The position numbers and the translations under genes were made by a program. DNA of 64,000 nt, from positions 18,042,001-18,106,000 of the forward strand of contig OZ059895.1 in assembly GCA_964057225.1 (NCBI GenBank), in the 5' to 3' direction. The notes under the pieces were generated by a model. The model saw nothing but the letters and a program-made list of their open reading frames with translations. It ran no database searches and was not told the origin of the DNA. Every line of letters begins with the position of its first letter. The stretch's first letter is position 1. Positions 41,199-62,357 of the stretch are shown here, piece by piece. This stretch comes from Auanema rhodensis (Eukaryota > Animalia > Nematoda).

Positions 41199-42324
41199 TA
41201 TTTGGTCCTTCACCAATAATTTAGCAATCCGGCTCAGGCTTTAAGCATAATTTAGAAGCCTTTTCTTGTTATTAAAACTTGAATTAACTTGTATATAGTT
41301 AATATGCATTACATGTCTTGTTTTAATAACTGTAATATAATATTAATGTTATTATGAAACAGTTTAAATATATTTATATATAAATATTTTAAAAAATTTT
41401 TTATTAATCTTATTGGTACGCCCATGGTTGCTGCAGTTTGAAGGCGGCGTTCTACTGACATAGGCGAGTAAACACAAATATTCCCAGGAAGGAACATATA
41501 TGTATAATATGTATAATATAAAATAAATCTGAGAGACAAATAACAAGTAAAAGAGAAAAAACATAATGTGCAATGAAGGGTTTTGCGCTCGAATGAGAGG
41601 AAATTGGAAAGAAGAACAGGAGTGAAGGGGGGAATATAGTATCTAGAGCTGACTTATGAGCGACGTATCATATACATATATCTATATAGTATAATGTATA
41701 TATATATATATATATATCTAGAAAAAAACAAATTGATTATACTTAGAGCTAAATAAGGAATAACGTCAGCAGCTATATCAAACTCAACTCTGGACTGTCT
41801 TGTCTGCTGATAAAAGTCCTAGAGAAATACAGAATTTAAAAAATTTTGTCTGGCTATAACTACCTCTTATGTAAAAAAGGGCTAGCGATACACCGGTAAG
41901 GAGAAAATAGCTCAATTGAGTCGAGAAAAGGGGAAACATTGGTGTAAAATTAGAAAAGAAAAAACTTTGTAATGGTATTTACATACATTTTTACTTAGGA
42001 AACATAATTAATAGATGAGGCAATCGGGATTAAGCCAAGCAGGGACCGTTCCCAAAAGAAATTATAAGATCTCATTACCGAAGCAAAGCATGAAATGCAA
42101 AAATGTAACTGTGAGAAGAAAAGTTGGAGGGGGAGGGAGAAAAAAAAGAAATAAATGGTTCAAAGAGGCAGCATTCGGAAAAGATGAAAAGACAACGAAC
42201 GCAGAGAAAAATATAATGGACTTCGATTCATGTAATGTCTTTCCAGGCATTCTCTTTTGAAGAAATTTAAAAGCAGACTAGAGCAGCGTGACCATCTTGG
42301 CCTGTTGTGGCTCGTTGGTTGAGC

Positions 42325-44161
42325 TTATTGTACAGTGCAACAACCGCAACGCTTCCTTTTCACATGTACCAGCTCCACTTTGCCCGCAGGTGGTAAGTCG
42401 TCCGTGTAGTCGTTGGAAAGCCTAAACAGTAAAGTTAAAATTTTGAAACAATAAAGTTTGTTGATAGAGAAAGAGAAGTGGTAGGGACAATCGTGGAGTA
42501 AATCGTGAAGGTAACAGGTGTTCGAAATAGTTTAGAATAGTTCAAATTTTGAATTAGTTTTGCTACATAGATTACAAAAGAGGTTGCCTGTTTTTGTGTA
42601 ACTAAACTATTTAAAAAATGCTAAATGGTGACGTGAGTGCAACGAGCTTTGGAATAAGGTTATATGCTTTTAGTATTTTGTGGGAAAATTGCGAAAGTTA
42701 GTGGAGGCATACAGTTTTTTCAGAAAATATTTTTGTGAAAATAAGGTAAACGTGGTGTCGGTAAGGAGAGAACGAAACAGAACTGTAGCATGATTGGACT
42801 AGACTAGAGTAGTTAGTAAAATCTAATTATATTTTCTATTAAAGCAGCATTAACTGATTTATTACTTAGAAGCATTTTCTTTGAAATATTTTGAGCATAT
42901 TAAAACGTTTCAAAAAATAATATTTGCTCTTTCAAATATTTCAAAAGAAGAATCTAATTAATATACTAGCGTGTACTGATCTAGCTACTGTTCTATCGCC
43001 CATCTATGTCTAAAAGAATAGATTGAACAGCAAACCTGGCTGCTGGCAGCCTGACGGATCCTTTAAAAGACCCAAGTAAATAAAATTAGTTTTTTTTTTG
43101 TAAAAATATTTTAATTATTAAAATTTTAGTTATTTTTCATAATTATTAACTAAAACTAACTGAAAATTGCTAAGGAAAAAATTGTAATCTGCTCGCACTC
43201 GCGTTCAAAACGTTACAATTAATAATAATTTAAGTTAAAAAAACATAAAAGTGCAAAGCAAACTTGGTGATCACACATGACAACTATATAAATATTAAAA
43301 TATATATTTATAAATTTTATATAATCTATGTAGTTAAACTTACTGAGCATCTGGTGATTGTTGTCGATAGCTGTCATGGGCAACTACGGGTTCAGGGGTG
43401 GCATGCTTTTCGCTTGGAAGAAGCTGTTCTTTTGATAAACCATTTTTTAAATAAGCCTTTTCACTGAAACATTTGAAAAATTGAAGAGCCAGACGTAAGT
43501 AGCTGATACCTTTCGGTGTTTGGTTGTTTAACTGGAGTTCCTTGAGCACTGCCAGGCCTACTGGGAGGAAAGGGCTTATGAAGATATTGCTCTACGATAG
43601 GATCAACCTCGTGGTATAAGTTTTCTTCCGGTCGGAATGGATTTTCATGTTCGGCCATTTTTCTGAAATTGTAATATATCAATGTTCAGTCAACACAGGA
43701 AAGCCACATACTTTGTTGGGAGAGGTGGACTAATTGTGCCTCCTCGACGGAATTCGTCAATTTCAACAATCTGTGTTGGTGGTGGAATAGGATTAGGTGA
43801 TCCGGGCTGAACAGTATCAGTAGTTATGGTCACCACGTTGACCGGAGCGTCAGGGCTGAAAAATAGAAAATGAATAATGCGGTTATAAGTGGTAATATAT
43901 GCACACATAGTAAAATTCAAAATATGTAATTTGAGATGAATGAATGAATATCGTAGAAGATAAGAGCTAGATGAGAGTAAGTTGATTTTGCACTTTAATG
44001 ACCTGGTTAAGAGACTAATTGAAATTTTTTTTACTTTTCAACACTATGTACTAAAACATGTTTAAAGATAATGGTCCGATATGACGGTGTGCAGCTGGTC
44101 ACTGGCACAATTCAATTAGTTTTCAAGACACATATGCATATAGTCGACAAGTTCATTTAGT

Positions 44162-44217
<56 letters not shown>

Positions 44218-47200
44218 CGAGAGAAGAAGGAGGAATAAAGATGGGAAAACAGAGGATGAGTAGCAATGACAAGGCAAGTGATTGAAAAGAATCGAGTAAT
44301 GAGACAGAAGACAGGCATTCCTTATATCGCTCTAAATGGTTCAGCTGTGTATAACTGTGCTCTCGAGGGAAATTTCATTCCTCACTTTGCCATCTCAAGG
44401 AATGCAATAATCAAATGGAAGATAAAAGAGAAAAAGTTTGCAAAGATAGAGGAAGAGAGAGGAGAGATCAGTAAAAGGACATGTGTTGTGATTTCAAAGC
44501 TTGAAACACAAATGACAACTAGATACTTGTTAGGAACTCAGTTAAAACAACAAGTAAACTTTCAAAATCGATGAATGTGTATGAAACGAGGGCTAGAATA
44601 TGACACAGGAGCTAAAAGACTTACTATGCATGTGTTAGCTCACTTGATCTTGTGCAGTTTGTCTGTCACTCCTTCTTTTTTACGACAAGAAGATTTGTCT
44701 CTTTCTTTCTCTCTCATACTTTGTTTGTTTCTCTCATTCTCTCTATTCTCTATATACTATTATGCACAACTCTTTTCGTATGCTGGTTTAGCCTTCAAAC
44801 TAGGGCAAATTGGTCAAGAAAAAAAAGAACATGAATATAGATGTAATTATCGGCACCTGGTACACGTGAAAGAAAGTAATTATAGGACAGACGAGATATA
44901 CTCCAAAGAAGAAGGTTAAATAATGCTCTAAGGATATAACTAGCTTTCAAACATTTGGACATCGACTAAACTCTCAACAAAAACTTTTTTGTTCTCTAAA
45001 GTGATAGAATATTCAAAATCTATTTAAGTACAGCCGAAAAAAATGAAAAGAAAATGGAAAAAAATGAGAGGAAGACGAGTTTGTTGAACAACCGCTCTAC
45101 ACGACAGCTGGAATACGAAATGGAATTTGCTGTATAAAGCAACTGGAGTATACATGCTATACGTGAACTTTACGCCAAAGTACACGTAAATGAGAAAAAC
45201 ATTTATGAAGTATACCAGAATAATGACGTCAAATAGATCCAAGTTATACAAGAATATAATGGAGAGACATGTGGTATGATCTGATGAGCTATTGAGGACG
45301 GTAATCAGTCGTTAATCGAAGAGATGAAGCTCAATACAAACATGAGAAGGGGAGAGCAATGTATAGCAGTCAATAGCATTTCATAAAAGGATAAATGAAG
45401 CGCAATAAACAACATTTCTTCTATTTCAAGACAATGTAAAGCTAATTAGTAATAGCTTTATGAATAGCATTCACATTATTCAAAATTCTATATGAAGATA
45501 CATATATGTGTATTTACTAGCTTAAACCTTAAGTTATACTGAATTCCATCAAGCCATGAGGTTGATTATGGTGTGTTCGAATCATAAAAGTGAAATAGGT
45601 AAATCTATTGGAATTTGAATGTAGTAGTTAAACTTTTCGTATCTTCATGCAGCTATTTGGTAGAATTATGTAGCATTACTGAACAACATAACAGATTGCC
45701 TGGAGGACATAAATGAATTGAACAGATTTACTTCTAAATTCTACAAACTCTTAGGCTCTCTCTCTCTTCTTATATAAGCACAATATCATTGCTCTATCTC
45801 TCTCGTTCTCTCGAATTTCTCTCACTCTTCTCTCTGTTCGCTGTGTCTCTCTCTTTCAGCTCTCCATATCGTTTCATCTGATTCTGATCGTCTTTTCAAT
45901 GCTCTTCATTTCTGCTTCCTTCTTTCAATCGAGATAACATCTCATCATAGATGACCAAGACAGAAATGCCCATGCCTTCAAGGGTCAAGTCTACATATGT
46001 ATATATATGAATGAATTAGAAGAATTCTATTGCTTTATAGCATTATATCACTAATGTTCACATAGAATACTACAAAGCAATCATGAAAAAGTAAGAGCAA
46101 TAAGTTGAATAGCAAAAGATTCAAAACGAAAAAGTTCAGCAAAAGTTTTAGATCATATAAAGAACATTAATCTGATATATTACATAATTATTCATTCTTT
46201 CTTATAATTTCGTTCTCTTCTCAATCCATATCTTTGCAATTCTATAATGGAATACCAAAAAATACTTCAACGATGGAAGAGGATGGCAGTAACTTGAATT
46301 TGGTTATTTATCCCTGAAGGCATATTCCGGTTGATAGGCAAGATCATAGGACATATACGCAGATGAAGTACTGAGATGTGATGAACAGACGAACTGCAGT
46401 AAAACTTAGCAAATTGAAAAGGCTCTGCTAACTTATGACGTTGACGAAAACGTTGCTATGAATGAGTATGATATGACACTGAAAACGGAAGAAAACGAAA
46501 AAGTGTTCGATGCTCAATAATCATTAGAACCATGCGTATATATGGGTGTGCCTGAATATGCTTGTTACTTGGTCTTTCAGCAAGAAGCTTCCAAAAGTTG
46601 ATGCTTCTCTGCTCGTTTTCGGTAAAAGAAAATTCGATTTTCAAATAGAAAAATGGAAGCCGAAGTATGAGAAGTTAATTGAGAAAGCTAACAGAAAGTT
46701 AAGTAAATATGGTAGGAGGAAAAAATAAGAAATGATGATCTAAAATCAGTTTATTTTCATGTTTTTTTCGTATGTTTTGTCATCAAAGACCGTGATTATT
46801 TTTGAGTAGTCGATACGCGACGGCTTACATTATTGGAAGACAGTTCTGCCACATTGAGTATCAGAAGCAAGTTCATCAGTATATATTTGATGGCGAAAAG
46901 AAACATTGAAAAAACAAGTTTATCAAAAGAAAATACTTTTTTGAATGATGAATGATTGTGAAAATGACAAAAGGATACACAGAGAGCAAATTCATTGAGC
47001 AGCTTTTTTTTCGTGAGAAGAGAAATCGAGAGAAAATGAACAATTCTTCTAATGGACATGTAAGCCAAAAAGCCAGGAACAAAACGATGATAGCTATCTA
47101 CTGTAGCTAAAGACAGAGAAAAAAGAACATGGGGCATGAAAGAAGGAGAAACGAAAATGAGAGAAAGAGATAGAGAGAGAGAGAATGAAACAATTGCGGT

Positions 47201-50200
47201 AAGAGAGCCAGAGATGGAAAAGAAAGACAAAAAAAATGCGTTTCACCACGAAAGAATCATGAAATGAATTCGTCTAAAATGAACCTGATGAAGCTCTAAA
47301 GCCCAATTGAAGTAAAAGACAGATGGCCGATGAAATAGTTAGCAGCTTGAGGACACTGTTTCATCAAATTTATTAGTCCGTCTTTATTCGTTTTTTAAAG
47401 ATATTTAAAACGAGAGAATATTGAAAAGACATCTTAGGTAGTAAAACATGTACAAATATCATCTGAATTATAGTGAGCTGGTTAGGTAATGATCTTAGGC
47501 TTAGCCTGAAATCTTATGCTAGTTGCAACATTCATACCTTATATTGCTAAATCTCTACAATCGACTCATGCATGTACAATCTCAGATATCCCTCCCTCCT
47601 TCTATCTACCTTTGTTATTGTCACTTTTCTTTCTCTTCACTTCTCCTCCTCTTTTTCTCTCTCTCTCCCTTTCTCTCTCTTTCTCACTTTCTTTAATTCT
47701 GTCGTCTAAATGACTTTTTGCCTTACTTAGCTATGTATAGCTAAGTACTGAGAATATATGGGAACTTCACACAATCTCAATGAGAACTGTGTAAGATAGC
47801 CTATATTACGATGAGTCAGAAACGCATAGAAATGCAATATAAACAAACAAAAGGATTTAATGCGCATACATGCTTAACCATAATGAACTTTCAAACTTTT
47901 TACCAAACTAAATAGTTTACAAAACTAAAAATTAATTTCATTATTATTCTAACATCTCGGATTTGAGACTAAAAAATTCAGTTGTAGACACGTAAACATA
48001 AGCAATTTGGTTTTTGTTTTTAGAAAAATAATTATTATTTGATGAGAAATAAGACTAAAAAGGGTTTGTCAGTACATCGAGGAGCTGCTGCAGTTACTAC
48101 AATCGTTCATTGGCAGCAATATGCGGATCATATTTAAATTTATTTTTATGAGAATTATTGGAAAGCATATGTGAAGGGGCCTAACACATAATATCTGTAT
48201 GGAAATTTTGAAACAAGAATTGGAAATTTAACTATTTTAATAGTAAAAAAATGTGTATAACTGTAAAATATTTAGTTTGTGAAAAAAGAAAAAGCAAATA
48301 TGGTTGGTTCGCAAAAAATAAAATTCTCCAAAAAAAACTAGTTCATATAGAAATTTTTTCTTAACGTTAGAAAATATGTTAAATATAATTAAAATCTTGA
48401 GAGGGAGAGAGAGAGAGAGAGAGTGAGAAAAATGTAAGGAAAGAATTAGAGAGAAAAAGATAGATATAGCAATAGATAAAGAAATTATATCATTAAATAC
48501 TTTGTTTCAAATATGGAAAAAACAAGAAATAAATTAACAGAAAAATAGAAAATAACAGATTGATGAATGTAATTAGATATGACGAAAAAACAAATGAAAA
48601 ATAAAGAAAATAGAAAGATAAGCTAAATGAAGAGATGAAGCTTCTCCGAAAAAAACGGGATGACGGAAAAAGGCAAAGACGCCAAAGACCTCCATACTGA
48701 CTACTCTCGCTCTCTTTCCCGCTCTGCTTCTCTTTGACTCTCATCCAATTCATTGCTCTATATATCCCTTTACCCTTTCACTACTTCACCCATCTTGCTC
48801 TCTCCTTCCCTCTCTTCTCTCACTCTCTAACTCTCTCCCTCTTCACAACCTCTTTTTAGACGCATGATAGTTATTGTGAACCATATAGACCATGATGCTC
48901 CACCACAATTGCCATATGTGGTCAGCCCCCAAACTAAGGGCATTGTCCTAGAGAGGGAGAGAGAGAGAGAGAAAGAGAGGTTAGGGACGAAGAGAAGTAT
49001 AAGGGATACATAGGGAAGATCAGGGACATGAGGTCGCCATGGATGGAGCTAGCATTTCCCCTACGGCACTTTCTCTACCAAACTCGTAAACCTAAAAGGA
49101 TGGAGAAAAATGAAGAGAATGGGACGTTGAGAAGTGCAACAGGGTAATCTTCCCAAAAAATCTGAAATCTACATAAGAGAAGATATTTTAAAAGGAAGCC
49201 GAATCAATGTGCTTTAGGGAAAGAGACAAAAAAGGAGAAGGAAAGAGGAGGATGACAGCAAATAGGAATAATTAGAGGGAAAAACACCACAAGCATGGTA
49301 GTTGATTCAGCTTGAAAACCGCGGAAATCAACCGATTACTATAACCGGAGCATCAAGCAAACAGAGCGATTGAATATAATTCTGTGAAGTGATGCAGTTC
49401 CCGCCTCTTCTGCTCTTGTTAAATCATATTAAATATATAAATTTTTACATATATTTATATATAAAAATTATACAAATTATCAAAGCTATTCAATCTAGAT
49501 AGAAAGAAAGAGGGAGAAGACAGAGGGTGACTGGGATAAAGGGTGTAGGTATTGATTTTAGGCCAACTGCTACTTCTTCGTCTTCTTCGTCATCTTCTGG
49601 GACTGAACATGGGCTAGCTGTTGGCTATTTGAAGCTTCTGCTTCTTATTCATAGTTTCTCTTGTCTACACTAGCACCCCATTTTCTCTTTTTGTCTCTAT
49701 TTCTCGTCTTGTTTCTATGCATGCTCTCCATCTCTTTTTTCCTCTTTTTCATTTCCCTTTTGGTCCATGTTCTTGCTGAAACCCCAAAGACCCTGTCCTT
49801 TTAATGACAACGAACCCAAGCCGATTGAACAATAGTTGCTCATGCTTCTCAGTTACAAGTAGCCGGAGTGAGTGAGGCTTCTCGAGATTAAGCTTAAGTA
49901 ATCGAGTAGCCAAAAAAGACCAGAGAAGTCGTCATTTCTGTTTTATTTCGACGAGCGGAGTATTCCTTCTCTCACTAGTTCCAAACCCCAAGGATATTCT
50001 TCACTAGTTAATCTATAAATGGCATCAAAGAATATTTTAGATGCTTGTAAATGGTCTTAAACCGAATTTGGGCAATTACCAGCAGGTGAATGAAATGATC
50101 ATGAAATGTCAATATAATATATCCATGAGCAAGATTGAAGAATAGCTATTGAAAGGTAACTAATAAGGAGTCATTTTCTGAATTCCATTTTCGAGGTCAA

Positions 50201-51039
50201 CCTGATTTGGCTATAAGGTAGTTAAACGAGAAAGTGAGAGCGAGACAGAGAGAGATAGAGAGAGGGATATCTAGAAAGTGCCCGGAAAAAAGGAAAAGAG
50301 TGGGGGGAGTAATAGAAAAATATCCTTATAGGATAATAGATATTACTATAGAAGTATATTATATAATAAAAATTAATTATATGAACTTGAGGATATACTG
50401 TATATCGTCATATATTGAATATAAACCACTATAACTATTATTGATTATACAGTTATTTTGTCATATTTATTATTTTCAAATAAACTATTCAGAATCTTAT
50501 ATACGTATATGTATATTTCATGTAATTTGGAATAGACATGGCAGAAAAGAGGAAAAATGCACTGTGATTTTGAGTCAATATTGTGAACATGCAGCATCTA
50601 ATGATCACAATCAAATATTTGTTCATATTTAGTACCAAACTGTCAAATAAAAGCTGTCTAAATGTTAGTTTATGCCAGAAATTGTTGTCCTGCCCTTTGA
50701 GCGTGTAATATAAATGGAAAAAATGCTTGAATGGGAGAGGAAAAACAGTTGAAAGGGATTATTGTACAAGCTTGAAGTCAAAGGAAGCAGAGATGCATGG
50801 GATGCTGACTAGGAATATTTTGTCAATGGTTGACAGATGATGAGAGATACGGATATGGATAGTATGGTTGGGGAAATGGAGGAGTTTAATGATTTTAGAT
50901 GAAAGACAGGTGTCAAGATGCCATGTTCATGCAGTATGTATAGGATGAAGCAATTGACTTTACTCTGGAAATTTTAGGTGAATAGCTGATGAATCTTTAA
51001 TATTGAACATCTGTAAATTGAATGCTCAAATCATAAGGA

Positions 51040-51072
<33 letters not shown>

Positions 51073-54000
51073 TCAAAAAGTATCGAAAATAAAAACGGTT
51101 TTTGACCAAAAAGCATGAAAAGCACAAAGGTTGTGGAAGGCGAGAGAGTTATAAAGAGAACGAAAGCTTTGGAGAAGAGAGGGGTGGATTCGGGAGTAGA
51201 GGATGAGAACCAATGAAGCTGAATATATTTCGAATTTGGGGGTAAAAGCAAAGGAAAAAATTATCGTAGATAAAGGCTGCTGGGGTGAGAGAATGAAGGA
51301 TGCCTCTCTATCTGTTTTTATTGCTCTCAATCGAAAAGGTAAGAGCTATGAGTGGAATAGAATAGCTTGTTAAAACATGATTGTATTATTGAAAAACCTG
51401 TTTTCTTTTCATCCTTCTCATCATTTGACAAGTTGGCATATTGTTGTCTTCTTGAAAAAATGATTGCGAAAGGGAGCACGGGACCGAGAAATGATTGAAG
51501 AGCTTAGAGTCTGACTCGTTTCTTTATAGACGACTTGCAGCTTATAACGTTCTCTTAGAATGACGAATGTTAATTTTTAGATGCTCCAGATGCTACTGTT
51601 GTGATGGTGATGGCGGTTCTGGTGAATGTGTCAGCTTTCAGAATAGCCATTGCTGTACGTTCAGTGAGGGATGTGTCGGATGACAGGAGACAGAGACATT
51701 GAATGGATGAAGAGAACCGTACGTGTGTGCTGGCAGATGGCACACGACACAGGATGAAGCATATATGATATTGCCTATTATAGTTGATGGATGTTAGATC
51801 TTGTTAGAACCGACCAGATCTGATAAGGAAGTGATTCAATACGAAAAGATGGGGTTGGCTTACGCAGAATGAACTTCCGATGACACAAAGGTTAAGAATG
51901 TCTGTTATATGAAAAAGGCCAACACAGAGCTGGCGACGGAATCGATGACCACAAATTGGTCATGATGCCCTCGGGGTCCAGCTGCCCGCAACGCATTTAA
52001 TGACATTGGCCTCAGCTTGAAACTCTCTTTGATGGGTGGACTTGCCTTCCATCAAGAAAAACGAAATTCGGTGTAGCTATTAGCTTAAGAAATTTTGACC
52101 AATGAGCTTAGAAAAGAATTCTAATAAGATGGGAATGGTGCTCATTTTCCGGATGATACTCTTTGAAATTGTTGAGTAGTTTTATGAAAGATCAACAACA
52201 AAGCAGATTTTTACACGTGCTTTGAAGTTAATGTTTGAACTTTGAGTCATTAAAGAATTGAAACTTGAAGATTTGTCTGGAGCCCTAGCGATAAGAGTTG
52301 TCGAAACAGTTCAGCTGTTCAGAAAAAGATCACACAGTTTACAGAAACACGTAGAAGTGTCAAGTGCACAATGATCACTGAGAATCTATTGAAGTATCAT
52401 AAAGCTTCAAGGAAGTATTAGCAACTGTCTTTGGTGGTAGAAGAAAGAAGATATATAAGGAGAGAAAGAACCAATGAATTGACTCTTCAAGAACATGATT
52501 TTGCAACTTATTTCTTGGCATTCGTGCTTGTATATACGTCTATATGTGTGTGGCATCGGCTATGTGAAAGAGGAATCAAAGCTAAACTCTGTAAGCAAGT
52601 TTAAGAAAGCAATGTGTTGGTACTAGTAAAGAAAGAAAGAAAAAGAAGAAATACGAAGAGAGAGATTTTTGGAGGGGGGGGGGGGTTGGGGTTCAAGCAA
52701 CATCTCCACCCACATGGCATAGCATTCTCCCAATGGAATAGCTAAATTTTCTAAAATACACATACATACATGCGCACACAGATATACACAACTGTTTAGT
52801 GCAGAGAGCTTGAAGTTGATCAAATTACGAAACTTTGATGTTTGTAGTAAACCAAATTTGATGGTTGTTGCTGTTTTTCTTGACACGTACATCGACGTGA
52901 TGTTTTGGAGAATCTGTATTTATGTCTGACATTTCAATTGTTTGAGCTTAGTTAGATGACTTATGAGCTCAAAAATATTTGAATGTAATTCTTCACAAGT
53001 TGCTATGAAAAATCTCTTCCTAGTTTGACGTGAAAATGCATCTGACAAGTGCTTCAAGATTACATCCACAAACCGTGAGTTCAGGAATATTGGTCAGATT
53101 CGAAATGAATTCTAGTTTGAGAAATGTTTTCACTGTTTGATATTAAAAAAGTCACAGAAGTTTGAAGTTGCAACATCATCCAATAACGTGATGAAATTTC
53201 AAAACATCACGCCATTAGATTATCTCTTGTTGTGCTTTTGTTTGCCTCTGCCATTTAGAAAAAACTGCTCAAAATGTTTCAAATCTGACAGAAAAAACAT
53301 CAAACAAATGTGTTTTTACAGTGCGGATAAACAGGAAATACATTGTGATGAGTTTCAAAATCAGCTACATACATGCTAACGTCATCATTCTTATGCTGAC
53401 AACCGAATCCATTGAGGATACAGTAAACTTTATACAATAGATGAAATAACGAAACAACTAAAGCTGAATCAACATCAGTATATAAGTCTGATGATATGGC
53501 AAGTAGTGTATTGAAAAACAGCTTGATTGAATCTAGGCTTGTAATATTATGTATCCTCAGAAGCGCCCCTATCGTTTGATTCTCTCTGACTGTAGTAGTA
53601 TTATTAGTTTGAAGCTTGTGATTCAGAGTTCTATCGCTTTGAGCATAAATGATTTTTGATCGATTTGCGATCACTCTCAACCTTTTTTCTCTTATTTTCT
53701 CATTATTTCCGCAAAAATGCTAAGGCGGATGGGACAACTTGCCCGTTGAATACAAGGACAGAATACGAGTTTTGCACCAAACCAACAACTGTCATATTTG
53801 AAAGGAGAAAAGTAAAGAGAAAATGGCAAAAAAGATAGCGATAGATTAACAGAGAGAACGAGAGACAGACAGAATAACATTCTAAGACAAGGTATATAGA
53901 GAGTAACAGAAGATGGACTAGAACGACGATAGACTGAGAAGAAATCCAAGTTGAATCCAGTGTAATGAAAGACAGTCACACAGCTAGCTAACAGCCGTCC

Positions 54001-57000
54001 GACTTGGACTCTGGAATGCCAATGACCTCTGTAGATTTGAAATAACTCATTCTTCATCGGCATACAGTCGTTCTTTACGTAAAGCTATTTCATTTTAATC
54101 ATCTTTGAATGATTTGAGAGATATGTGAGACTTTTTGGGAGATGATGATGATGGTGATGATGATGATAGCTGTACAGACAGGCGTCAATAATGATAAGCA
54201 GTTGGAGGGAGGATGATTTGTTATTTCTCGCGCATCTATTTTGTATTTTTTGTCAAAATAAATAAAAATTACTATATAGTTATGATGTTTGGAATATAAT
54301 GACTATATAGTAAAATATATATTTTTATAAAATAGTATTTTCACATTTCATTATACGTAAGCTTTTCAGCGTTTCCCTCTATATCTTAAATCTGTATATA
54401 GTTGTATCTTAAGAGAAGCACATATCTAGCTTCAGCTAAATCTTCATTCAAACACAAAAGCCTATATAAAAATGCAATTATTTCTCTTCGATATTTCCCT
54501 AATATTCTTGAAATAGATGAAATGAATCAGATTTTTTTGGAGGAAAAGCTGGATGAGATAAAGTTGGCGATTAGAACAATATATTTCGAACAATTGAAAA
54601 ATATCATGTTGAAATAGCAGTTATTATAACTATATGTATAGTAATTGCACTTTTCTCGATTATAATAGGAAACTTGGTTGCCTAAACGTTGTCGTCAAAT
54701 TCATGGCCTTCTCGTTTTCTTTCTACTCTGTCATTGGGTCAGTATTTCCGATTTCAGGATGTGGTGTCCGAATAGACACAACGAAACGGCTGTTAGACAT
54801 GCAAAGCAGATAATTGAAATTCCATGCTGAAGATTGATCTAGCTTAGCAAGAGATGACGAAGGAGAAGAAGAAGCCGGCAATGAGATAGACTAGAAAAGA
54901 TTTTTTGGAATCTGTTGCTCCTGCTTCATATATGTATATAGAAATCTAACAATGATGCTAGATATGAAAAGAGAAAAGGACGAATAGAAGAGCAGAGAGA
55001 GATAGAGAGAGAGATAGATAGATCGACAGACATCGAGAAAAAAAGATAGAGGATTGGAACAAAAAACTTAATTGTCGCCTCGGGCAAGTAGATGAAAAGC
55101 ATTAACATGCTCAATTGAATTGTGGAAAAAATCAATTAAAATCAAATTGAGAAAAGAGGGAGATTAGAGAGAAAGGATTGAGAGGATAGGAACAGAGTAG
55201 TGTGAGCTAGTTAAACAACGACAATGATTGATTTAAAAACAAAAAAATGACATTAAACAGATATAAATGATGAGGAGTGTGACGGAGAATTAAATATGAA
55301 ACAAGTTGAGAGAGAAATCGTGAAGCGTTAGGTTGCTGATGTTACTTGCTGGACATATCGCTGTAATATGGCTAACAAACTAGTCCAGTCCTCCATACAT
55401 GGGCAAATATGTACAACATCTACTCTGCCATAGCCACCGGCACTGGCACAGAAAAAATCGCAGCAACAGCAGCATACCAACAGCTCTTAGTCTAATCTGG
55501 CATGGCATAGTCTGAGCGAAGCCAAACCAAGCTAAGCAATGAAAAAGCTCAGCATAGTCTGTCAGCGTGTAACAACTTGTGTATGTCCTTTTCAACAATG
55601 GAAGTGAATCAAAAAAAAGTTCTTTTTCTTGAGATTTCTACTGAAACAGCCAGCTGTTTCAACAATCCATGTATACGTAAATGATACAATACAATGAATG
55701 CATAGAACATGAACTTATAGTTGAATTGAGGAATAATGAAGCTTAATCTTTCAACTTAAGCTTATAAGGTGCAGGAAGCCAAAAACAATTGTGATAGCTA
55801 AGAACAAATCAGATAAACTATGATATATAGTATCAGATTGATGTAGTAAGGAAAAGAATATATTTTCTAAATTTAGACTAATTTCTCAAAATGGTTCACA
55901 AGCTGAAAGTGTAATTTACTGAAAACGGCAGAGAAATACATTTTTGGTTTAGTGAAACTGGTTCAATAGCTGTATGAGATGATGATGATGATGATGATGA
56001 TGCCAACAGGTGGGGAGAAGGGTGGGGGGAGTGCAACGAAGAGCGAAAAGAGAAACTGATGGTATAAGTTGAAAACAGAAAATCAATATAGTGAATAGAC
56101 AAAATATAATTGAAACATTTTTCATTATATAATTAGCATAAATTATAATTGAAAGTTAAGTATATAGTTAAATATTGATGTTTGTAAATAATTAATGATC
56201 AGTGAAAAAAAATAAATTTATGAAGGCAATTTTGAGGGAAAAAAACATTTTGTTTTGACAAAAAGAAGAAGGTTTTTGTTACTTTTATGTTGTTTAAAAT
56301 ATATTTTTTAAAAAGCTGACACATGAAAAGAAAACAAAAACCTGAAAAGCAGGAATAATTGAGAGAATTAGAGAGATTGGTAGACAATATTATTGAGGAC
56401 ATTCGTCTGCAGTACTAGTTTACATCATCAACAATATCCAGATAATCAGAAGAAAACAGCTCTCAGAGAAATATAATTTATATACACATATAGTATATAT
56501 AAATATGTTTCAAATTTTTTTATTTTATTTTATTGTTTGAATTTGAAAATTGTGTTCAATGCCACGAAAATATAAGGAAATTGACGCTGATCTGCTATAG
56601 GCAGGACATGCTGCTTGGAATTGTTGCAAAGAAAAACAAAACACAGAAATCCCTTCTCGCTTTTCCTTTCTATTTGCCATTTTGCCAAGAACCATGGCTT
56701 TCAGACGTTTTTTTCAAGTCAGTCAGTTCGTTTCAATTCACTTCGCTTCAGCTTTCTAAAGCTCCGACGATGGACATCTGGCACAAATTCAAGAAAAGTG
56801 CCAGGATGACACGAGAATGTCGACGATGACGATGGAAAAATAGAAAAAGAACAGCGTGAAAAGGAGAGTCGAACAGGGAAAATGAAGAAAAAATGAAGAT
56901 GGTTGCTGGATTTTCTCGAAGACATTAGATGAGAAAATACTAAGATAAACGAACAATGATGAAATAAGCTTCACAATGATTTCAGTTCGTTAAAGTCAGC

Positions 57001-60000
57001 TGAACTTTATAGTTTATTTTTCATTGGCTGAAAATAAAATAAAAAAATAAAAAACACTTAGAATGTTTAACTGATATTTTTAGAAAATAAGAGAAAAGAT
57101 AGCAGATAAACGGAGATAATTGAGGTAGAGGGGTAAGATGTTGAGAAGACCTGCTGTTCCAGGAGCAATCTGATATGGAAATTGTGTACGACAATCAACA
57201 GATAGAGCGAGAGAGTGAGAAACAGTTTGAAGGCATGAGAGATATGGAAAGAAAGGAAGAAGATGATGGCGAATAAAGAGAAGAGACAAGGCATGGATTG
57301 AAGCTTGTAACTCTCCTCAAGCAGTTATTAGTTGTATATAAAAGGATAGAACAAAGGTCACATATGAAAGACGTAGTACTTGTTAGGATGGGTGAGAAGC
57401 TAAAAATGATGTCCGCTCGACACAAACATTAGTTTTAGAGGTCAAAAAGGCGCTAGTTACAGAGATGAGCAAAGCTTTTTCTATCCAGAAAATGCGACAG
57501 ATTTTTTGGCTACGTGCTTTTGGATGCAAAATAAGGATATAAGACAGAACGTTTTGGATCTTAAACAGCGAAATCGAGAGACAAACAAGGGTGTTGCAAA
57601 GAGACCATGAATTTAATATAGCGATGATAAAGAAAATAAATGATTAGAAAGATTCTTGGGATAAGAAAATTGAAAAAAGTTCAAAAAGTGAGAAGAATGA
57701 ACCAAAAAAAACCTAGATAAATGATATGATGGATAGTTTCGATTGACGTCTGTGCTGATCAGAGTAGCAAACAGAACTGACAAAGAGAAAGAGGATTAAT
57801 CAGTTGATAAACTCAGATATTGAAAGTATTTGAATAGAATGAAAGATGATATACTTTGTATATAATGAGAATGATGGTATAAACATATGAAAATTGCAAA
57901 AAAAATTATTAATTGAACTTACTTGGTCATAGTTGAGAGAATAGGTTGGATGTGTATGTTTGTATGTGTGTGCGTGTTCGTTGAGTATGAAGCTGTTCCA
58001 CCTCCTATAGGCAAAGAACCTCTCTGAGAGAAAGAGGGAGGGGAGGGAGGATTTCGATGAGGTAAGGACGAGGTGTGGAGGGAAAAGGGGAGGAAGAACT
58101 GCCTTGGAGGTTAAAGTAACGATAGATAATAGACAGAGAATTAGGCAGAAGAGCTGATGAAGAGATGGAAAACGAGGCAGGGAAATGTAGACAAGGTAAG
58201 AGAGAGAGAGAGAGAGAAGGAGAGAGCCGGATGGCTTGTGAATAGCTGTGTGAGGATAGCTGTGTATGTATGCGTCTGTTCGTTTTCTGCGTTGGGGAGA
58301 GGAAAAGATGAAAGACAGAGAGACAGAGCAGCAGAGATGAGAAGAAAGCTGTGAGATAGAATAAAATATTGAGAGACAAAAAAAGCGCAAAAGAGAAAGA
58401 GAAAGAGATAGAGTTAAGCAGTTCCTCCTGCTCCAACAACCCTCAAGGCACCGCCCCACCATTCTTTCTCTTTATCTTTTGCCTCTCAATACGTGGAATA
58501 CTATTTTGTTGGTAAATTCTCTCTTAATCGTCTTATTCTAAATATATGTGGGAGGTCTCCATTAAAAACTACCGAAGATCCATGGTAGATATAAGAATAA
58601 AAGAGACTAAGTATACATGCCTCAAGGATGAGCATATGTGGAGAAAAGTAGCTAAAGAGGAAGAAAAAGACAGCAATAGCGATATAATAGCAATTTTATT
58701 GAGAGCCAAAAAAAGTGAAAAGGTCAGAGAGTAAGAGTTAAATGAGTTTTCAAAAAAACTTGAAAAGTGTAGGCTGATATGTGAAGAACCATGCTGCTTT
58801 TCAACCCTTATCTCCAATTTCCTTTTCTTCAAAGCATCTCTTCTTCTCACCTTCTCTTGTTCTTCAAACTCTCATCGTAGTCATTCATTGTATCGTCATA
58901 GTTATCGCTGTCGTTAGTACTTCTTCTATCTGCTCATGAAAGCATATCCGAGCTTGATGGTAGTTAGAAGTTGTGTATATCCTCTCTGTCTCTTTGTGTT
59001 ATCGTTGTTCATTCTCGAGATACAATCATATCAGCCATGTCTAGGCTTCTTTTCTTCTCAATATCATCCAGTTATTCTCATGACTTTTGGGAAAAAATGT
59101 GAATAGCAGAGCAGCCGTGTGGGTTGATGAATCTATTATTAGATTCAGATGTATGTTATGGAAACGATTCAGCAGGAAATTCAGCCTGAACCAGTTACAA
59201 GTTGGTTCATTGATTCAGATGACATTCATACGTTGTATCATCGTTGCAATTTTTTTAAAAGTTGAAACAAGTCATCGACTTGCTCGACTTTCATATACGT
59301 CTAATTCTTTCATCTTTGCATTAGGTTATCGGGTTCTTCTGATCGTTGAGCATGTACACATGCGCTCATATGAATGCATATGTATGTAACATACCTTCAC
59401 TAGACGAAGAAAGAAAGGTATTTGAGTAGATAGATAGATAGAGAAGGGGAGAGAAAGAGAGAAAGAGAGAGAGAGAGATAGTTTATTGAGAGAATGTGAA
59501 GAAAGTTTGATAGATGTAGACTGCAAAGTTTAGTTATAAATACACAAAGAAATAGTGCAACAGATTGAGAGATGATAGACAAGTTTTAGAAAACATAGCC
59601 AGGATGATCGAATAATTTATACAAAGCTTCATGAATGAGAGAGAGGGGGAGGGTGGTACGTGGTAGAAACGACAGAAAACCATAACGACCCGGCAGAATG
59701 AGACTGAGAGATCAAGAGAAAGAGAGGAAAAAAGAGAGAGAGATTGGCAACAAGACACGAGTGCGAAGGTAAATAGAAAAAACGAGCTGCATGTAAACTT
59801 GTGGTGAGACGACGACATCGTTTGGTGACAGATGTGATGATGTGGCATGTCATCCGAAAACTCTTTTCTCTAATTCTATTGCTTCACTTCTTATTATCAT
59901 TAACGTAGCCTCATGTTTCAACCAGCTTTGAAACATATTCTTTCTCTTGTTGGTTGAGATGTTTTTGAAAAAGAGTGAGAGCAAAATGATTGGCTATTGC

Positions 60001-60637
60001 CATCAAACTCGTGTTAGACAGATGCCAAGTTCAACAAGTTGCGGTCAATGTTGCCGTAGGGTATGTATAATGATACACGTGCAATAACTCAAATTCTGTG
60101 ATTTATGACTGGTTTGAGAGCGAAATAAATATTTTTTAGTATGATACATATAAATAATTCAAAAATCAGAAGAATGAATAGAAATGATCAAGTAATGAGA
60201 TTTTGTTCTCTCAAAAATACTTCAAGATATGAAACTAATTGGAAAAGAAAGTGATGAGACATCAATTGCTTGATTAGTTATCACACTATTCAGTGAATAA
60301 TAATAATTAATTAAATAGCAAATTGAAAAATCAATAATAAATAACAAATAAAATAGAAAAGTAATAATAAATATGAAAGAAGAAACTAACTCTGTGAAAC
60401 TTTGTCGTTGAAGTATGGGTGTTGGCTCATCAGGCTCCTTCTCATATATGAAAGTCTTGACATCATCATTACCAAATGAAACCCTAGAACGATAAAAAAA
60501 TAAGATTATCATTAATGATTTTTGTATATTTTTAAAATTTATTTCTATAGAAAATTCAATGAATTGTCCTTTTTGTTATAGAAAACCTACTTTTTACCCT
60601 CAACACGACGGCGAAAAATCTTGAATAGGTTACGCAT
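42325..60637 (-). CDS. Small uncharacterised protein with N-terminal RVxF-type motif, ENPFRP motif and C-terminal CaaX; includes a predicted 16.5-kb intron
   Basis: Exons 60637-60591, 60483-60391, then four exons between 43855 and 42325, all phase-compatible: MRNLFKIFRRRVEGKKVSFGNDDVKTFIYEKE...FTDPDAPVNVV...MAEHENPFRPEENLYHEVDPIVEQYLHKPFPP...VELVHVKRKRCGCCTVQ*. The 3' exons are solid; the join to the 60-kb exons is inferred from phase only. Confidence 0.7.
42974..43078 (-). ncRNA. Candidate structured intronic RNA (three hairpins), family unknown
   Basis: GC-richer island in an AT-rich intron; three adjacent stems whose G-U pairs work only on the minus (host-sense) strand. Confidence 0.3.
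44164..44213. repeat. (AG)n microsatellite
   Basis: Uninterrupted AG run of about 50 nt. Confidence 0.95.
55977..56001. repeat. (GAT)n microsatellite
   Basis: Tandem GAT triplets. Confidence 0.9.
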
Positions 60638-62275
60638 TGATAACGTTTATGTTGATTTTCAATCAAATATGTGAGTTTTCTCAAAAGAAATAAAATATTG
60701 TTGAATATTTGGTAAAAACGAAAATAATAAATAACGAGTGAAGTATGAAATGAAAAAGCCTAAAATGGATTGCATGAAAACTAAGAACATTGACGTCGAC
60801 CTCTAACTGTTTGGATGAAAAAAAAGGATAACCTATTATGGTATATTCTATAGCAAAACTAATCCAAGATATAAGAAAAAGGAAGAGAAAAAAACGTTGA
60901 AGTACAGAGATTTGAAGAAAGAGAATAAAAGAAAATAAGATTAGAACACGTAATACTCAAGAGAACATCTACAAAAAAGTAAAAGAAGGCGGAAGAAAGA
61001 GAGAGAAAAGAGAGAGAGAGAAAAGAGAGAGAGAGAAAGAAAAAGAAAGAAAATGCATGATACAATGCACATTTTAATGAAATTAAAAAAAAAAGAAGAA
61101 GATGATGAGTTCTTGGCTGATTTTCGAAAACGTTGAAGTTATCCTTCAACTATCCAGTCAAAGGTTATGTTGTCATCATTCTTGTTATTTCATTTAAAGT
61201 AATTTCTTCTTTTTCTTCTCAAATCGAGAATGAAATGTCCTTCAAATCAAAAGCAAATTTGGTATTGAGGTAGTGAACGAGTATAAGGAGAGTATATGAG
61301 TATATTCATGAAGATGGATGTATCTGTACGTGTGTACATGAGAGTGAAAAGAGATGAAGAGTACGCGTGTGTGTGTGTATGAGGCTGTTCAGTCGATTTA
61401 CAAAATACTAAAAGGTCGCGACATGTAACAGAATCTTGAGTCACAAACTGTTGAAAAGAGATTTTTAGTCAATAAACTAAATGGAAGTTTCGAAGAGAAA
61501 AAAAATTCGAAGAAACCGAAAACAAAGTGAAAAGGAACATTCAAACTTCAGAGAGAGAAAGAATGAAGAAAAGTATTGAAATAAAGAGAAAGTCAGTTAT
61601 AGAGAGAAACTGAGAGAGAGAGAGAGAGTGAGAGAGAGAGAAGGAACGATGCCAATGAATGTATTTAAGTGTATATGAAAAAGAAAACGGAAAACGAAAA
61701 ACAAATAAGATGATGAATGAAATTTAAAAAGAAATTTTAGAATTTCTTTTAAAAGAGCGCAGGACAGCGAAGAAAATGCTAACGGCGACATGAGGCTAGA
61801 AGATGTAGAGAAAAGACAAAAAACTATATGTTGTCTTTAAGGTTTTATTGAATCAACTGCTATGCTTTATCTATCAGGCTTCATTTAGTAAATGGATATA
61901 TTCGGAGAGTTGATCATCGATGTCTGGGAGTAAGCTGACTGAAGAATCAGGAAAAATTCGAGCAGTGAGCCGACCAGTTTCGCATTCTTAGCACTGATTG
62001 ATTATTAAAAATATTTTTTTCGCCTACATTATCTCCAATCGGATCATATTTATGAAATTTGAATTAAATACTATATATAGAAAAATATTAGTTAGTTAAA
62101 TCACCATGTAATATAACCTATATGGGATATGAGAAATGACGTTTAGGTAGATGAGACGTTAAAACATTCTCCGTTTTCGTCTTCATTCCCCTGTATATCT
62201 CCATACAAACATTTAAAAGATATTCAGTATAAGTAGCATATATATAAATATATATGTATAGAAAGAGATATATAT

Positions 62276-62343
<68 letters not shown>

Positions 62344-62357
62344 AGAAGAAGAAGAAG
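62276..62357. repeat. Compound (AG)n(GAA)n microsatellite
   Basis: Long AG run followed by GAA triplets. Confidence 0.95.

What the first reader, a model, noticed from the sequence alone, without database searches (positions are those of the whole stretch)
42325..60637. Candidate lipid-anchored PP1-targeting protein with its docking motif on distant exons
Seen: the C-terminus KRKRCGCCTVQ* is a polybasic stretch, two upstream Cys and a CaaX box. Two exons 16.5 kb away encode RRRVEGKKVSFGNDDVKTF and splice in phase. Known: K-V-x-F followed by a downstream hydrophobic pair is the RVxF/phi-phi PP1 docking arrangement; CaaX plus adjacent Cys gives prenylation and palmitoylation. The middle is Pro-rich and disordered except ENPFRPEENLYHEVDPIVEQYLHKPF. 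Inference: an undescribed plasma-membrane PP1 adaptor; an internal ATG (MAEHENPF, about 43649) could yield an isoform lacking the PP1 motif.
Basis: partly seen in the sequence, partly recalled or inferred. Interest (0 to 1): 0.7.

Follow-up and report, generated by a model that had tools for sequence, protein, structure and literature searches.

The report
Lipid-anchored candidate PP1 adaptor gene
This is a real nematode gene, the counterpart of the unstudied C. elegans gene W05B5.1; it encodes a small, floppy, membrane-anchored protein with a conserved docking site for protein phosphatase 1 that alternative first exons can include or leave out.

Summary
The sequence observation holds. A minus-strand gene (60637..42325) has exons that splice in phase. 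It ends in a polybasic stretch, two further Cys and a CaaX box (CTVQ). Its far exons encode KKVSF followed by a hydrophobic cluster.

RNA contigs from this organism confirm the three 3' junctions exactly. Upstream, however, they join exon 3 to a different first exon ending at 57923 (ATG ACC AA|gt). That transcript lacks KVSF.

Both far exons are nonetheless genuine:
- Against Auanema sp. JU1783, exon 2 differs at 16 synonymous and 2 non-synonymous codons.
- Spliced mRNA contigs from other nematodes carry R/KVSF, the NPFRP block and, in one of the two, the CaaX tail in a single ORF.

The family is the C. elegans W05B5.1 group. It is found across nematodes and reaches insects. It has no Pfam domain and no PDB relative, AlphaFold2 predicts it disordered, and I found no functional study. 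K-x-V-x-F, a Tyr 8-13 residues later and NPFRP are invariant in the alignment; CC..Q is nearly so.

Best reading: a farnesylated, probably palmitoylated, disordered PP1-targeting protein, with PP1 docking switched by alternative first exons. PP1 binding and lipidation are inferred, not shown. Moderate interest.

The parts
60591..60637 (-).
   Evidence: The same exon with the same donor and phase lies about 110 nt upstream of exon 2 in Auanema sp. JU1783 (L001 from 11264, MRNILKVFRRRSDGK; 7 synonymous and 5 non-synonymous codon differences). It also occurs in C. elegans (L003 7654, MRSILKHFGLGKRKK) and in filarial proteins and an mRNA contig (MRKLFGHFGKKKLKKVSF; P0012, P0122, L004).
60391..60483 (-). 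Exon 2: (K)VSFGNDDVKTFIYEKE...SFT, carrying the RVxF-type motif (VSF = 60482-60474) and the hydrophobic cluster TFIY (60455-60444)
   Evidence: Orthologue residues about 20-51 map here by tblastn (84% Haemonchus, 74% Auanema). 16 synonymous versus 2 non-synonymous codon differences against Auanema. K, V, F and the downstream Y are invariant.
57923..58264 (-). Alternative first exon '1c': long CT-rich 5' leader ending ATG ACC AA|GTAAGT (ATG 57930-57928). It splices directly to exon 3 and gives M-T-N-PDAP..., an isoform without KVSF. The 3' end is exact; the 5' extent is inferred, since contigs run 255-342 nt beyond the junction.
   Evidence: The loose-end consensus at 43855 in three runs maps uniquely at 57923-57952. 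Frame and upstream stop were checked. The junction ATGAC[N]AA|GT[AG]AGT is conserved in Auanema (L001 12562) and C. elegans (L003 9283). Analogous short products occur in A. viteae and Panagrolaimus (MK|SPDAPP; P0097, P0115).
43712..43855 (-). Exon 3: PDAPVNVVT...PIPPP...SPPLPT(K), Pro-rich
   Evidence: Junctions confirmed by RNA contigs. Conserved positions V60, P70, I73, P75, P76, S92, P93, L95 in alignment A2.
43510..43662 (-). Exon 4: near-invariant Met (ATG 43658-43656) followed by the central block ENPFRPEENLYHEVDPIVEQYLHKPF (43646-43569)
   Evidence: phmmer with this exon alone gave 51 representative clusters at E<=1e-3, the best at 1.6e-21. NPFRP, L, E, D, IV are invariant in nematodes plus insects. 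The only predicted helix of any length lies here (residues 119-125 of P0060).
43344..43463 (-). Exon 5: variable linker (..YLKNGLSKEQL..)
   Evidence: Junctions confirmed; moderately conserved within Rhabditina.
42325..42421 (-). Exon 6 coding part: ..DLPPAGKVELVHV + KRKRCGCCTVQ* (anchor 42360-42328, stop 42327-42325)
   Evidence: Nearly all complete-looking family members end in a polybasic run, 1-2 extra Cys and C-a-a-Q; the exceptions are truncated models and the filarial CaaX-less isoform.
   Evidence: Contigs run 751-787 nt beyond 42200. Window 41598-41442 is 79% identical to the Auanema 3' region. The 9-mer is shared by four species.

Best explanation
The locus is the orthologue of C. 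elegans W05B5.1. It encodes a protein of about 170-220 residues with no folded domain, built from three conserved short-motif blocks.

Block 1, N-terminal: [KR][KR]V[ST]F followed by V-x-T-phi-V-Y-[DE]. This is the grammar of an RVxF (plus phi-phi) docking site for the PP1 catalytic subunit. Its Ser sits in a basophilic-kinase context, so docking could be switched off by phosphorylation, as in the glycogen-targeting subunit GM.

Block 2, central: M-x-x-x-NPFRP-x3-L-[YF]-HEVDPIVE-x-Y-x2-[KR]P[FY]P. It presumably binds a second partner, either a substrate or a localiser. An EH-domain protein is one guess, because of the NPF.

Block 3, C-terminal: polybasic-C-x-C-C-a-a-Q. I expect it to be farnesylated (X = Q), trimmed and methylated, then palmitoylated on the neighbouring Cys, which would hold the protein on a membrane.

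At least three alternative first exons are used. Exons 1a and 1b splice to the R/KVSF exon. Exon 1c skips it and gives an anchored isoform that cannot dock PP1. The gene would therefore tether PP1 to a membrane-bound partner, and promoter choice would decide whether PP1 is brought along.

Shown: exon structure, the 3' junctions, use of exon 1c in RNA, conservation of all exons and motifs, and predicted disorder. Inferred: PP1 binding, lipidation, which membrane, the partner of the central block, and any competition between isoforms.
For: Gene model and junctions.

Exon 1c in RNA and its conservation.

Far exons are real coding exons. tblastn of orthologues maps onto E2. Codon differences against Auanema are 16 synonymous: 2 non-synonymous in E2 and 7:5 in E1b. 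Exon 1b is present in Auanema, C. elegans and filariae.

Orthologous spliced mRNA contigs carry the motifs in one ORF. L002 (1011 nt, ORF 39-674) has KRVSF, NPFRP and CGCCSVQ. L004 (1345 nt, ORF 68-715) has an exon-1b-type start plus KKVSF and NPFRP.

Family size and range: 51 representative clusters from the exon-4 search and 92 proteins in the profile search. These cover all major nematode groups, including Trichinella and Trichuris, plus three insects at E about 1e-8 with the same three blocks.

Invariant motif columns.

The motif fits the published consensus [K/R]-x0-1-[V/I/L]-x-[F/W], with preceding basic and following acidic residues and a phi-phi motif 5-8 residues downstream (PMC10731240, read). 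PKA phosphorylation of the Ser in GM's KVSF releases PP1c (PMC6737228).

Disorder: AlphaFold2 gave mean pLDDT 55.6 and pTM 0.13.

No folded-domain family: Pfam; PDB sequences.
Against: No binding, lipidation or localisation data exist for any member that I could find. The only paper naming W05B5.1 treats it as a predicted mir-35 target.

RVxF-like strings are common, and here the motif also forms a basophilic-kinase site, so its conservation could serve another partner.

The spacing between R/KVSF and the conserved T-phi-V-Y varies from 8 to 13 residues to the Tyr, so the phi-phi assignment is uncertain.

In the only RNA laid for this organism, the transcript seen lacks the motif. The long isoform is supported here only by conservation and by orthologous mRNAs.

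A filarial mRNA lacks the CaaX end, so membrane anchoring is not obligatory for every isoform.
Confidence: 0.6

Rival explanations
1. The protein is a lipid-anchored scaffold whose conserved function lies in the central NPFRP/YHEV block, for example engaging EH-domain or other trafficking proteins. On this view the N-terminal KRVSF..TFVY block is a kinase-regulated site for some partner other than PP1, such as a 14-3-3-type reader or a beta-strand addition to another domain.
For: The central block is the most conserved part and is present in every isoform, including the one seen in RNA here. KRVSF is also a basophilic kinase consensus. Spacing to the hydrophobic cluster is variable. Many predicted family products start at the conserved Met just before NPFRP.
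Against: K, V and F of the motif are invariant from Trichinella to insects, with exactly the residues the PP1 pocket requires. Basic residues precede and acidic residues follow, as in known PP1 partners. No alternative reader is known for that pattern.
Confidence: 0.25
2. In this species the exons at 60.4-60.6 kb are not part of this gene's mRNA. They would be either relics or part of a separate upstream transcript, and the gene would begin at exon 1c.
For: In three of the four runs laid, the contig goes on from exon 3 into exon 1c; in the fourth it stops at the exon-3 edge. No run was laid on 60.4-60.6 kb.
Against: Strong purifying selection on E2 (16 synonymous: 2 non-synonymous) and on E1b against Auanema, intact splice sites, and phases that fit E3. 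Orthologues in many species, including mRNA contigs, join the same exon to exon 3. Contigs show presence, not absence, and one contig stops exactly at the exon-3 edge, as a graph branch would.
Confidence: 0.05
3. The family is a remote protostome relative of vertebrate paralemmin: a prenyl- and palmitoyl-anchored disordered phosphoprotein acting on membrane dynamics. PP1 docking would be a lineage addition or irrelevant.
For: The Atlas feature search lists a chordate 'Paralemmin domain-containing' cluster at 0.86, below the 0.9 level and so a lead only. As I recall it, and not tested here, paralemmin ends in basic-C-x-C-C-a-a-X preceded some way upstream by an AELVVI-like motif, resembling VELVHV + KKKKCGCCSVQ.
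Against: No member hits Pfam PF03285 even at E <= 10. Similarity could be composition plus the anchor motif alone. I could not fetch a paralemmin sequence to test this.
Confidence: 0.1

Closest known systems
C. elegans W05B5.1 and its nematode orthologues (annotated 'uncharacterized' or 'hypothetical')
   Same: Orthologous. Same exon order, same three motif blocks, same alternative first exons 1b and 1c. The nearest sequence is Auanema sp. JU1783 P0060 (98% identity in exon 4).
   Different: Nothing essential. The exon-1a N-terminus (M..SPPTSPNG..KR) of orthologues was not found within the window and probably lies beyond 64000. C. elegans has an extra 24-nt piece before the conserved Met.
TIMAP / MYPT3 (PPP1R16B / PPP1R16A), prenylated PP1 targeting subunits
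   Same: A KVxF PP1-docking motif near the N-terminus combined with a C-terminal CaaX box that gives prenylation and membrane association (PMC6737228).
   Different: The MYPTs have a MyPhoNE element and ankyrin repeats that reshape the PP1 cleft. This family has no ankyrin repeats or any folded domain, adds two palmitoylatable Cys, and is unrelated in sequence.
Disordered RVxF-phi-phi PP1 partners (PNUTS, spinophilin/neurabin, PPP1R15, GM)
   Same: An intrinsically disordered region carrying [KR][KR]VxF with flanking basic and acidic residues and hydrophobic residues a few positions downstream (consensus as given in PMC10731240). The RVSF Ser is phosphorylatable as in GM.
   Different: No Arg or Phe extension motifs are recognisable. 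The distance to the hydrophobic cluster varies. Binding is untested.
Paralemmin and H-Ras-type dual-lipid anchors
   Same: Polybasic stretch, Cys-x-Cys-Cys-a-a-X end; farnesyl plus palmitoyl logic (established knowledge, recalled, not tested here).
   Different: No Pfam Paralemmin match. X is always Q in this family.

Membership tests
W05B5.1 orthologous group (nematode, reaching insects; no Pfam entry) | Central NPFRP-x3-L-x-HEVDPIVE-x-Y block | tested here: met
   Exon 4 alone finds the family at E down to 1.6e-21; 88-98% identity to Rhabditina orthologues.
W05B5.1 orthologous group (nematode, reaching insects; no Pfam entry) | Colinear N-terminal R/KVSF exon and C-terminal polybasic CxCCaaQ exon in the same gene | tested here: met
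   tblastn of full-length orthologues maps in order on E2, E3, E4, E5, E6. The junction E2-E3 was not seen in this organism's RNA.
RVxF-type PP1-interacting proteins | Motif [K/R]-x0-1-[V/I/L]-{P}-[F/W] in a disordered region, with basic residues before and acidic after | tested here: met
   KKVSF here (E1b/E2) and KRVSF in most orthologues; K, V, F invariant. Low pLDDT. Consensus from PMC10731240.
RVxF-type PP1-interacting proteins | phi-phi motif 5-8 residues C-terminal of RVxF | tested here: inconclusive
   F-I at +8/+9 here and F-V at +6/+7 in Caenorhabditis. In Trichinella and insects the conserved T-phi-V-Y lies at +10 to +13, with another I/M-V pair at +7/+8.
RVxF-type PP1-interacting proteins | Physical, RVxF-dependent binding to the PP1 catalytic subunit | not testable with these tools
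   No multimer folding or interaction data available. No paper found.
CaaX-prenylated, palmitoylated membrane anchors | Cys at -4, aliphatic a2, X specifying farnesyltransferase | tested here: met
   C-T-V-Q here. Nearly all complete-looking members end C-[STNVAH]-[VLI]-Q. That X = Q directs farnesylation is established knowledge.
CaaX-prenylated, palmitoylated membrane anchors | Additional Cys within a few residues upstream, plus a polybasic run | tested here: met
   KRKR-C-G-C-C-TVQ here; KKKK-C-[GAH]-C-C in orthologues.
CaaX-prenylated, palmitoylated membrane anchors | Actual lipid modification and membrane localisation | not testable with these tools
   None.
MYPT3/TIMAP (PPP1R16) | MyPhoNE element and ankyrin repeats after the KVxF motif | tested here: not met
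   No Pfam ankyrin or any other domain hit on exons or on orthologues. AF2 shows no repeat fold. No further coding exon was seen in the 16.5-kb intron by homology.
Paralemmin (PF03285) | Match to the Paralemmin profile | tested here: not met
   No hit at E <= 10 in 26 + 13 members. Only an Atlas feature score of 0.86.

The most novel reading that the evidence does not exclude
An ancient, protostome-wide family of wholly disordered, dually lipidated PP1 adaptors. Conserved alternative first exons would switch PP1 docking on (1a/1b + exon 2) or off (1c). The PP1-less isoform would then act as a natural competitor for the partner of the NPFRP block, giving promoter-level control of a membrane phosphatase.
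Probability: 0.3. Interest if true: 0.6.

Novelty: new member of a known kind. Interest (0 to 1): 0.5.

Why it matters
PP1 gets its specificity from hundreds of short-motif partners. Few of these are known in nematodes, and very few are membrane-anchored by lipids. This family is conserved across Nematoda, including parasites such as Haemonchus, Brugia, Trichinella and Strongyloides, and it reaches insects. It has no Pfam domain, and I found no functional study. The work here gives it a concrete, cheap-to-test hypothesis in C. elegans (W05B5.1) and an isoform logic, with PP1 docking included or skipped by first-exon choice, that suggests how it might be regulated. It is not a new principle: prenylated PP1 targeting subunits (TIMAP, MYPT3) and disordered RVxF partners are both known.

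Tried and rejected
Searches that found nothing:
- Pfam on each exon and on 39 family members.
- Rfam over 41000-64000.
- PDB sequence search with the N-terminal segment and with the family profile.
- ESM Atlas with exon 4 alone.

I looked for ankyrin or other exons hidden in the 16.5-kb intron, in case this was a TIMAP/MYPT3 homologue. tblastn of 87 family proteins places nothing there, and the ORFs there are CT-repeat translations.

I looked for the orthologues' exon 1a (M..SPPTSPNG..KR) in 60401-64000. Regex and low-stringency tblastn found nothing convincing.

UniProt's automatic names for some members ('Miff', 'ZM', 'PAM2', '4Fe-4S ferredoxin-type' domain-containing) were not reproduced by Pfam, and I treat them as spurious.

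Searching the supplements of two C. elegans PP1 papers for W05B5.1 failed because no supplementary files are held.

Spliced model. Exons were searched one by one by reference, and full-length orthologues returned by the tools stood in for it. The exact-sequence look-up of this organism's own protein was therefore left out.


Full report
**1. What is in the sequence**

- E1 60637-60591
- E2 60483-60391
- E3 43855-43712
- E4 43662-43510
- E5 43463-43344
- E6 42421-42325

Each has a GT donor and an AG acceptor, and every intron is phase 2. The frame therefore runs unbroken from the ATG at 60637 to the TAA at 42327-42325, about 217 codons.

E1/E2 encode ...RRRVEGK|KVSFGNDDVKTFIYEKE.... E4 encodes KMAEHENPFRPEENLYHEVDPIVEQYLHKPF.... 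E6 ends ...VELVHVKRKRCGCCTVQ*.

**2. RNA evidence from this organism**

One search found four runs of one study that hold about half of the sampled words of 43300-43900. Their kind is a guess, 'RNA?', but their contigs lack the introns.

Laid on 42200-48100, the contigs are 100% identical to the window. They skip exactly 42421-43343, 43464-43509 and 43663-43711, with CT..AC ends, which is GT..AG on the minus strand. So E3-E4-E5-E6 and a 3' UTR of about 0.9 kb are transcribed and spliced as modelled.

Upstream of E3 three contigs run on for 255-342 nt. The 30-nt consensus of that overhang is not E2. It maps uniquely at 57923-57952. There the minus strand reads ...CAACT ATG ACC AA|gtaagt. The ATG is in frame with E3 (M-T-N-PDAP...) and an in-frame stop lies 63 codons upstream.

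So the transcript assembled in these samples starts from another first exon, which I call 1c, and lacks KVSF. Contigs show presence, not absence. The fourth run's contig stops one base past the E3 edge, as it would at a branch in the assembly graph.

**3. Are the far exons real?**

They are, on four lines of evidence.

*Homology of E2.* phmmer with E4 alone against 1.84 billion representatives returned 51 clusters. Many are 210-270 residues long with the block at about residue 100, and these begin M...KRVSFG.... tblastn of all fetched relatives against the window puts their residues about 20-51 on 60485-60390: 84% for Haemonchus contortus P0055, 74% for Auanema sp. JU1783 P0060, and 49% for C. 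elegans W05B5.1 (P0058).

*Selection on E2.* Against the Auanema genomic locus (L001), E2 differs at 16 synonymous and only 2 non-synonymous codons. The flanking introns do not align.

C. elegans has MRSILKHFGLGKRKK 283 nt upstream of its exon 2 (L003). The filariae Acanthocheilonema, Brugia and Dirofilaria are annotated with MRKLFGHFGKKKLKKVSF....

*Spliced mRNA contigs from other nematodes.* L002 (1011 nt, ORF 39-674) has KRVSF, NPFRP and CGCCSVQ in one uninterrupted ORF. L004 (1345 nt, ORF 68-715) has the exon-1b-type start, KKVSF and NPFRP.

The orthologues' more usual first exon, 1a (M..SPPTSPNG..KR), was not found in 60401-64000. By colinearity with L001 it probably lies at or beyond the window's end.

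Exon 1c is also conserved. ATGAC[N]AA|GT[AG]AGT is the only such site in the corresponding intron of Auanema (L001 12562) and of C. elegans (L003 9283). Short products such as MK|SPDAPP... are annotated in A. viteae and Panagrolaimus beside long ones.

The gene thus has at least three alternative 5' exons. Two lead into the R/KVSF exon and one bypasses it.

**4. The family**

Word-index searches with P0008, P0060 and the alignment A2, and a cluster look-up, show members in many nematode groups:
- Caenorhabditis, Pristionchus, Auanema, Mesorhabditis and strongylids
- Strongyloides, Steinernema, Panagrolaimus, tylenchs and aphelenchs
- ascarids, filariae and Dracunculus
- Trichinella and Trichuris

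All are named 'uncharacterized', 'hypothetical' or something similar.

The profile also reached three insect proteins at E about 1e-8: Cacopsylla, Neodiprion and Trichogramma, 370-442 aa. They carry the same three blocks: LKRVSFGSSKGSMVETLVYE, WDNPFRPDGDLSREADEIVELIKGGKP and KKKPKC[KQ]CC..Q. The ESM Atlas lists arthropod (0.91) and mollusc (0.87) 'hypothetical protein' clusters as nearest by features. These are leads only.

There is no Pfam family at any threshold and no PDB relative. AlphaFold2 on alignment A2 gives mean pLDDT 55.6 and pTM 0.13. The only helices are residues 119-125, in the central block, and a four-residue turn.

In the library, W05B5.1 occurs in one paper, as a predicted mir-35-family target whose seed-match disruption was tolerated. 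I found no functional description.

**5. The motifs**

In alignment A5 (16 nematodes and 3 insects) the invariant columns are:
- K, V and F of [KR][KR]V[ST]F
- a Tyr 8-13 residues after the Phe, in V-x-T-phi-V-Y-[DE]
- N, P, F, R, P, L, E, D, I and V of the central block

The two Cys and the final Q of the tail are at least 90% conserved.

The N-terminal motif fits the published RVxF consensus: [K/R]-x0-1-[V/I/L]-x-[F/W], with basic residues before, acidic residues after, and a hydrophobic pair 5-8 residues downstream (PMC10731240). Because the spacing to T-phi-V-Y varies, I call the phi-phi assignment inconclusive. The Ser of KRVSF lies in a basophilic-kinase context. PKA phosphorylation of the equivalent Ser in GM releases PP1c (PMC6737228).

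Nearly all complete-looking members end in polybasic-C-x-C-C-[a][VLI]-Q. By established knowledge, X = Q directs farnesylation, and neighbouring Cys plus basic residues give palmitoylation and stable membrane binding, as in H-Ras and paralemmin. None of this is shown for this protein.

A Met just before NPFRP is nearly invariant, and many database products start there.

**6. Mechanism proposed and its rivals**

The best reading (0.6) is a lipid-anchored, disordered PP1-targeting protein. The tail holds it on a membrane. The central block binds a second protein, either a substrate or a localiser; NPF suggests an EH-domain partner, which is a guess. The N-terminal block brings PP1 (GSP-1/GSP-2 in C. 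elegans). Alternative first exons decide whether the PP1 dock is present, and a PP1-less anchored isoform is what the available RNA shows.

The rivals are:
- The dock serves another partner and the central block is the core function (0.25).
- The far exons are unused in this species (0.05). This is contradicted by purifying selection and by orthologous mRNAs.
- A remote paralemmin relationship (0.1). This is not exclusive and rests on an Atlas score below threshold and on my recollection of paralemmin's C-terminus.

**7. Comparison with the known**

The protein works like TIMAP/MYPT3, which combine KVxF with CaaX. It is not a member of that family, because it lacks MyPhoNE and ankyrin repeats, which were tested and not met. 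It resembles the disordered RVxF partners (PNUTS, spinophilin, PPP1R15, GM) in motif grammar only. By homology it is simply the W05B5.1 family.

**8. Verdict**

The gene is annotated elsewhere but uncharacterized, and the PP1-adaptor reading is a reasonable, testable prediction rather than a new principle.

Noticed in passing
window 42953-43115 (minus strand; intron between E5 and E6): A 163-nt intronic block is 84% identical to Auanema sp. JU1783 (L001 19380-19539), which is better conserved than the coding exons (74%). There is no Rfam hit and no RNA-contig cover. A two-sequence consensus fold is unremarkable. It could be a regulatory element, an unannotated small RNA or a rarely used exon.
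   Followed up: partly
window 51939-52004 (minus strand; inside the 16.5-kb intron): A 66-nt element is 95% identical to Auanema L001 14913-14978. It contains the palindrome ATGACCA-ATTTG-TGGTCAT. It is probably an intronic enhancer or transcription-factor site. No Rfam match.
   Followed up: partly
window 41890-41898 (minus strand, 3' UTR); also L001 about 20382, L003 about 17706, L002 about 922: The 9-mer TACCGGTGT occurs exactly once in the 3' UTR of this gene in four species, with otherwise diverged flanks in C. elegans. The 6-mer is expected 0.04 times per UTR. CCGGTG complements nt 2-7 of the miR-35 family seed as I recall it, and W05B5.1 is listed as a predicted mir-35 target (PMC7462058).
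   Followed up: partly
L004 (Logan mRNA contig, filarial sample), ORF 68-715: This filarial transcript has the exon-1b-type start, KKVSF and the NPFRP block, but ends KKKKRTSMKGLLFIK* instead of the CaaX tail. Other filarial models end KKKCGCCNLQ. So a non-anchored isoform may exist.
   Followed up: partly
L003 15909-15932 (C. elegans W05B5.1 locus): A 24-nt piece adds eight residues (TMDLHFRK) just before the conserved Met in the annotated 226-aa product. The 218-aa relative P0059 lacks it. The matching intron in the window is only 49 nt and has no such piece.
   Followed up: no
window 42392-42728: Low-depth contigs (depth 3-5, against about 90-100 for the mRNA) cover the E6-proximal part of intron 5 in three runs. 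This suggests pre-mRNA or partial intron retention.
   Followed up: no
window 44152-44227, 47149-47194, 62260-62350 and others: There are many (CT)n/(TC)n microsatellites in the large intron and upstream. They produce the long 'SLSLSL' ORFs in the mechanical ORF list and the many spurious matches between the window and the Auanema locus.
   Followed up: no
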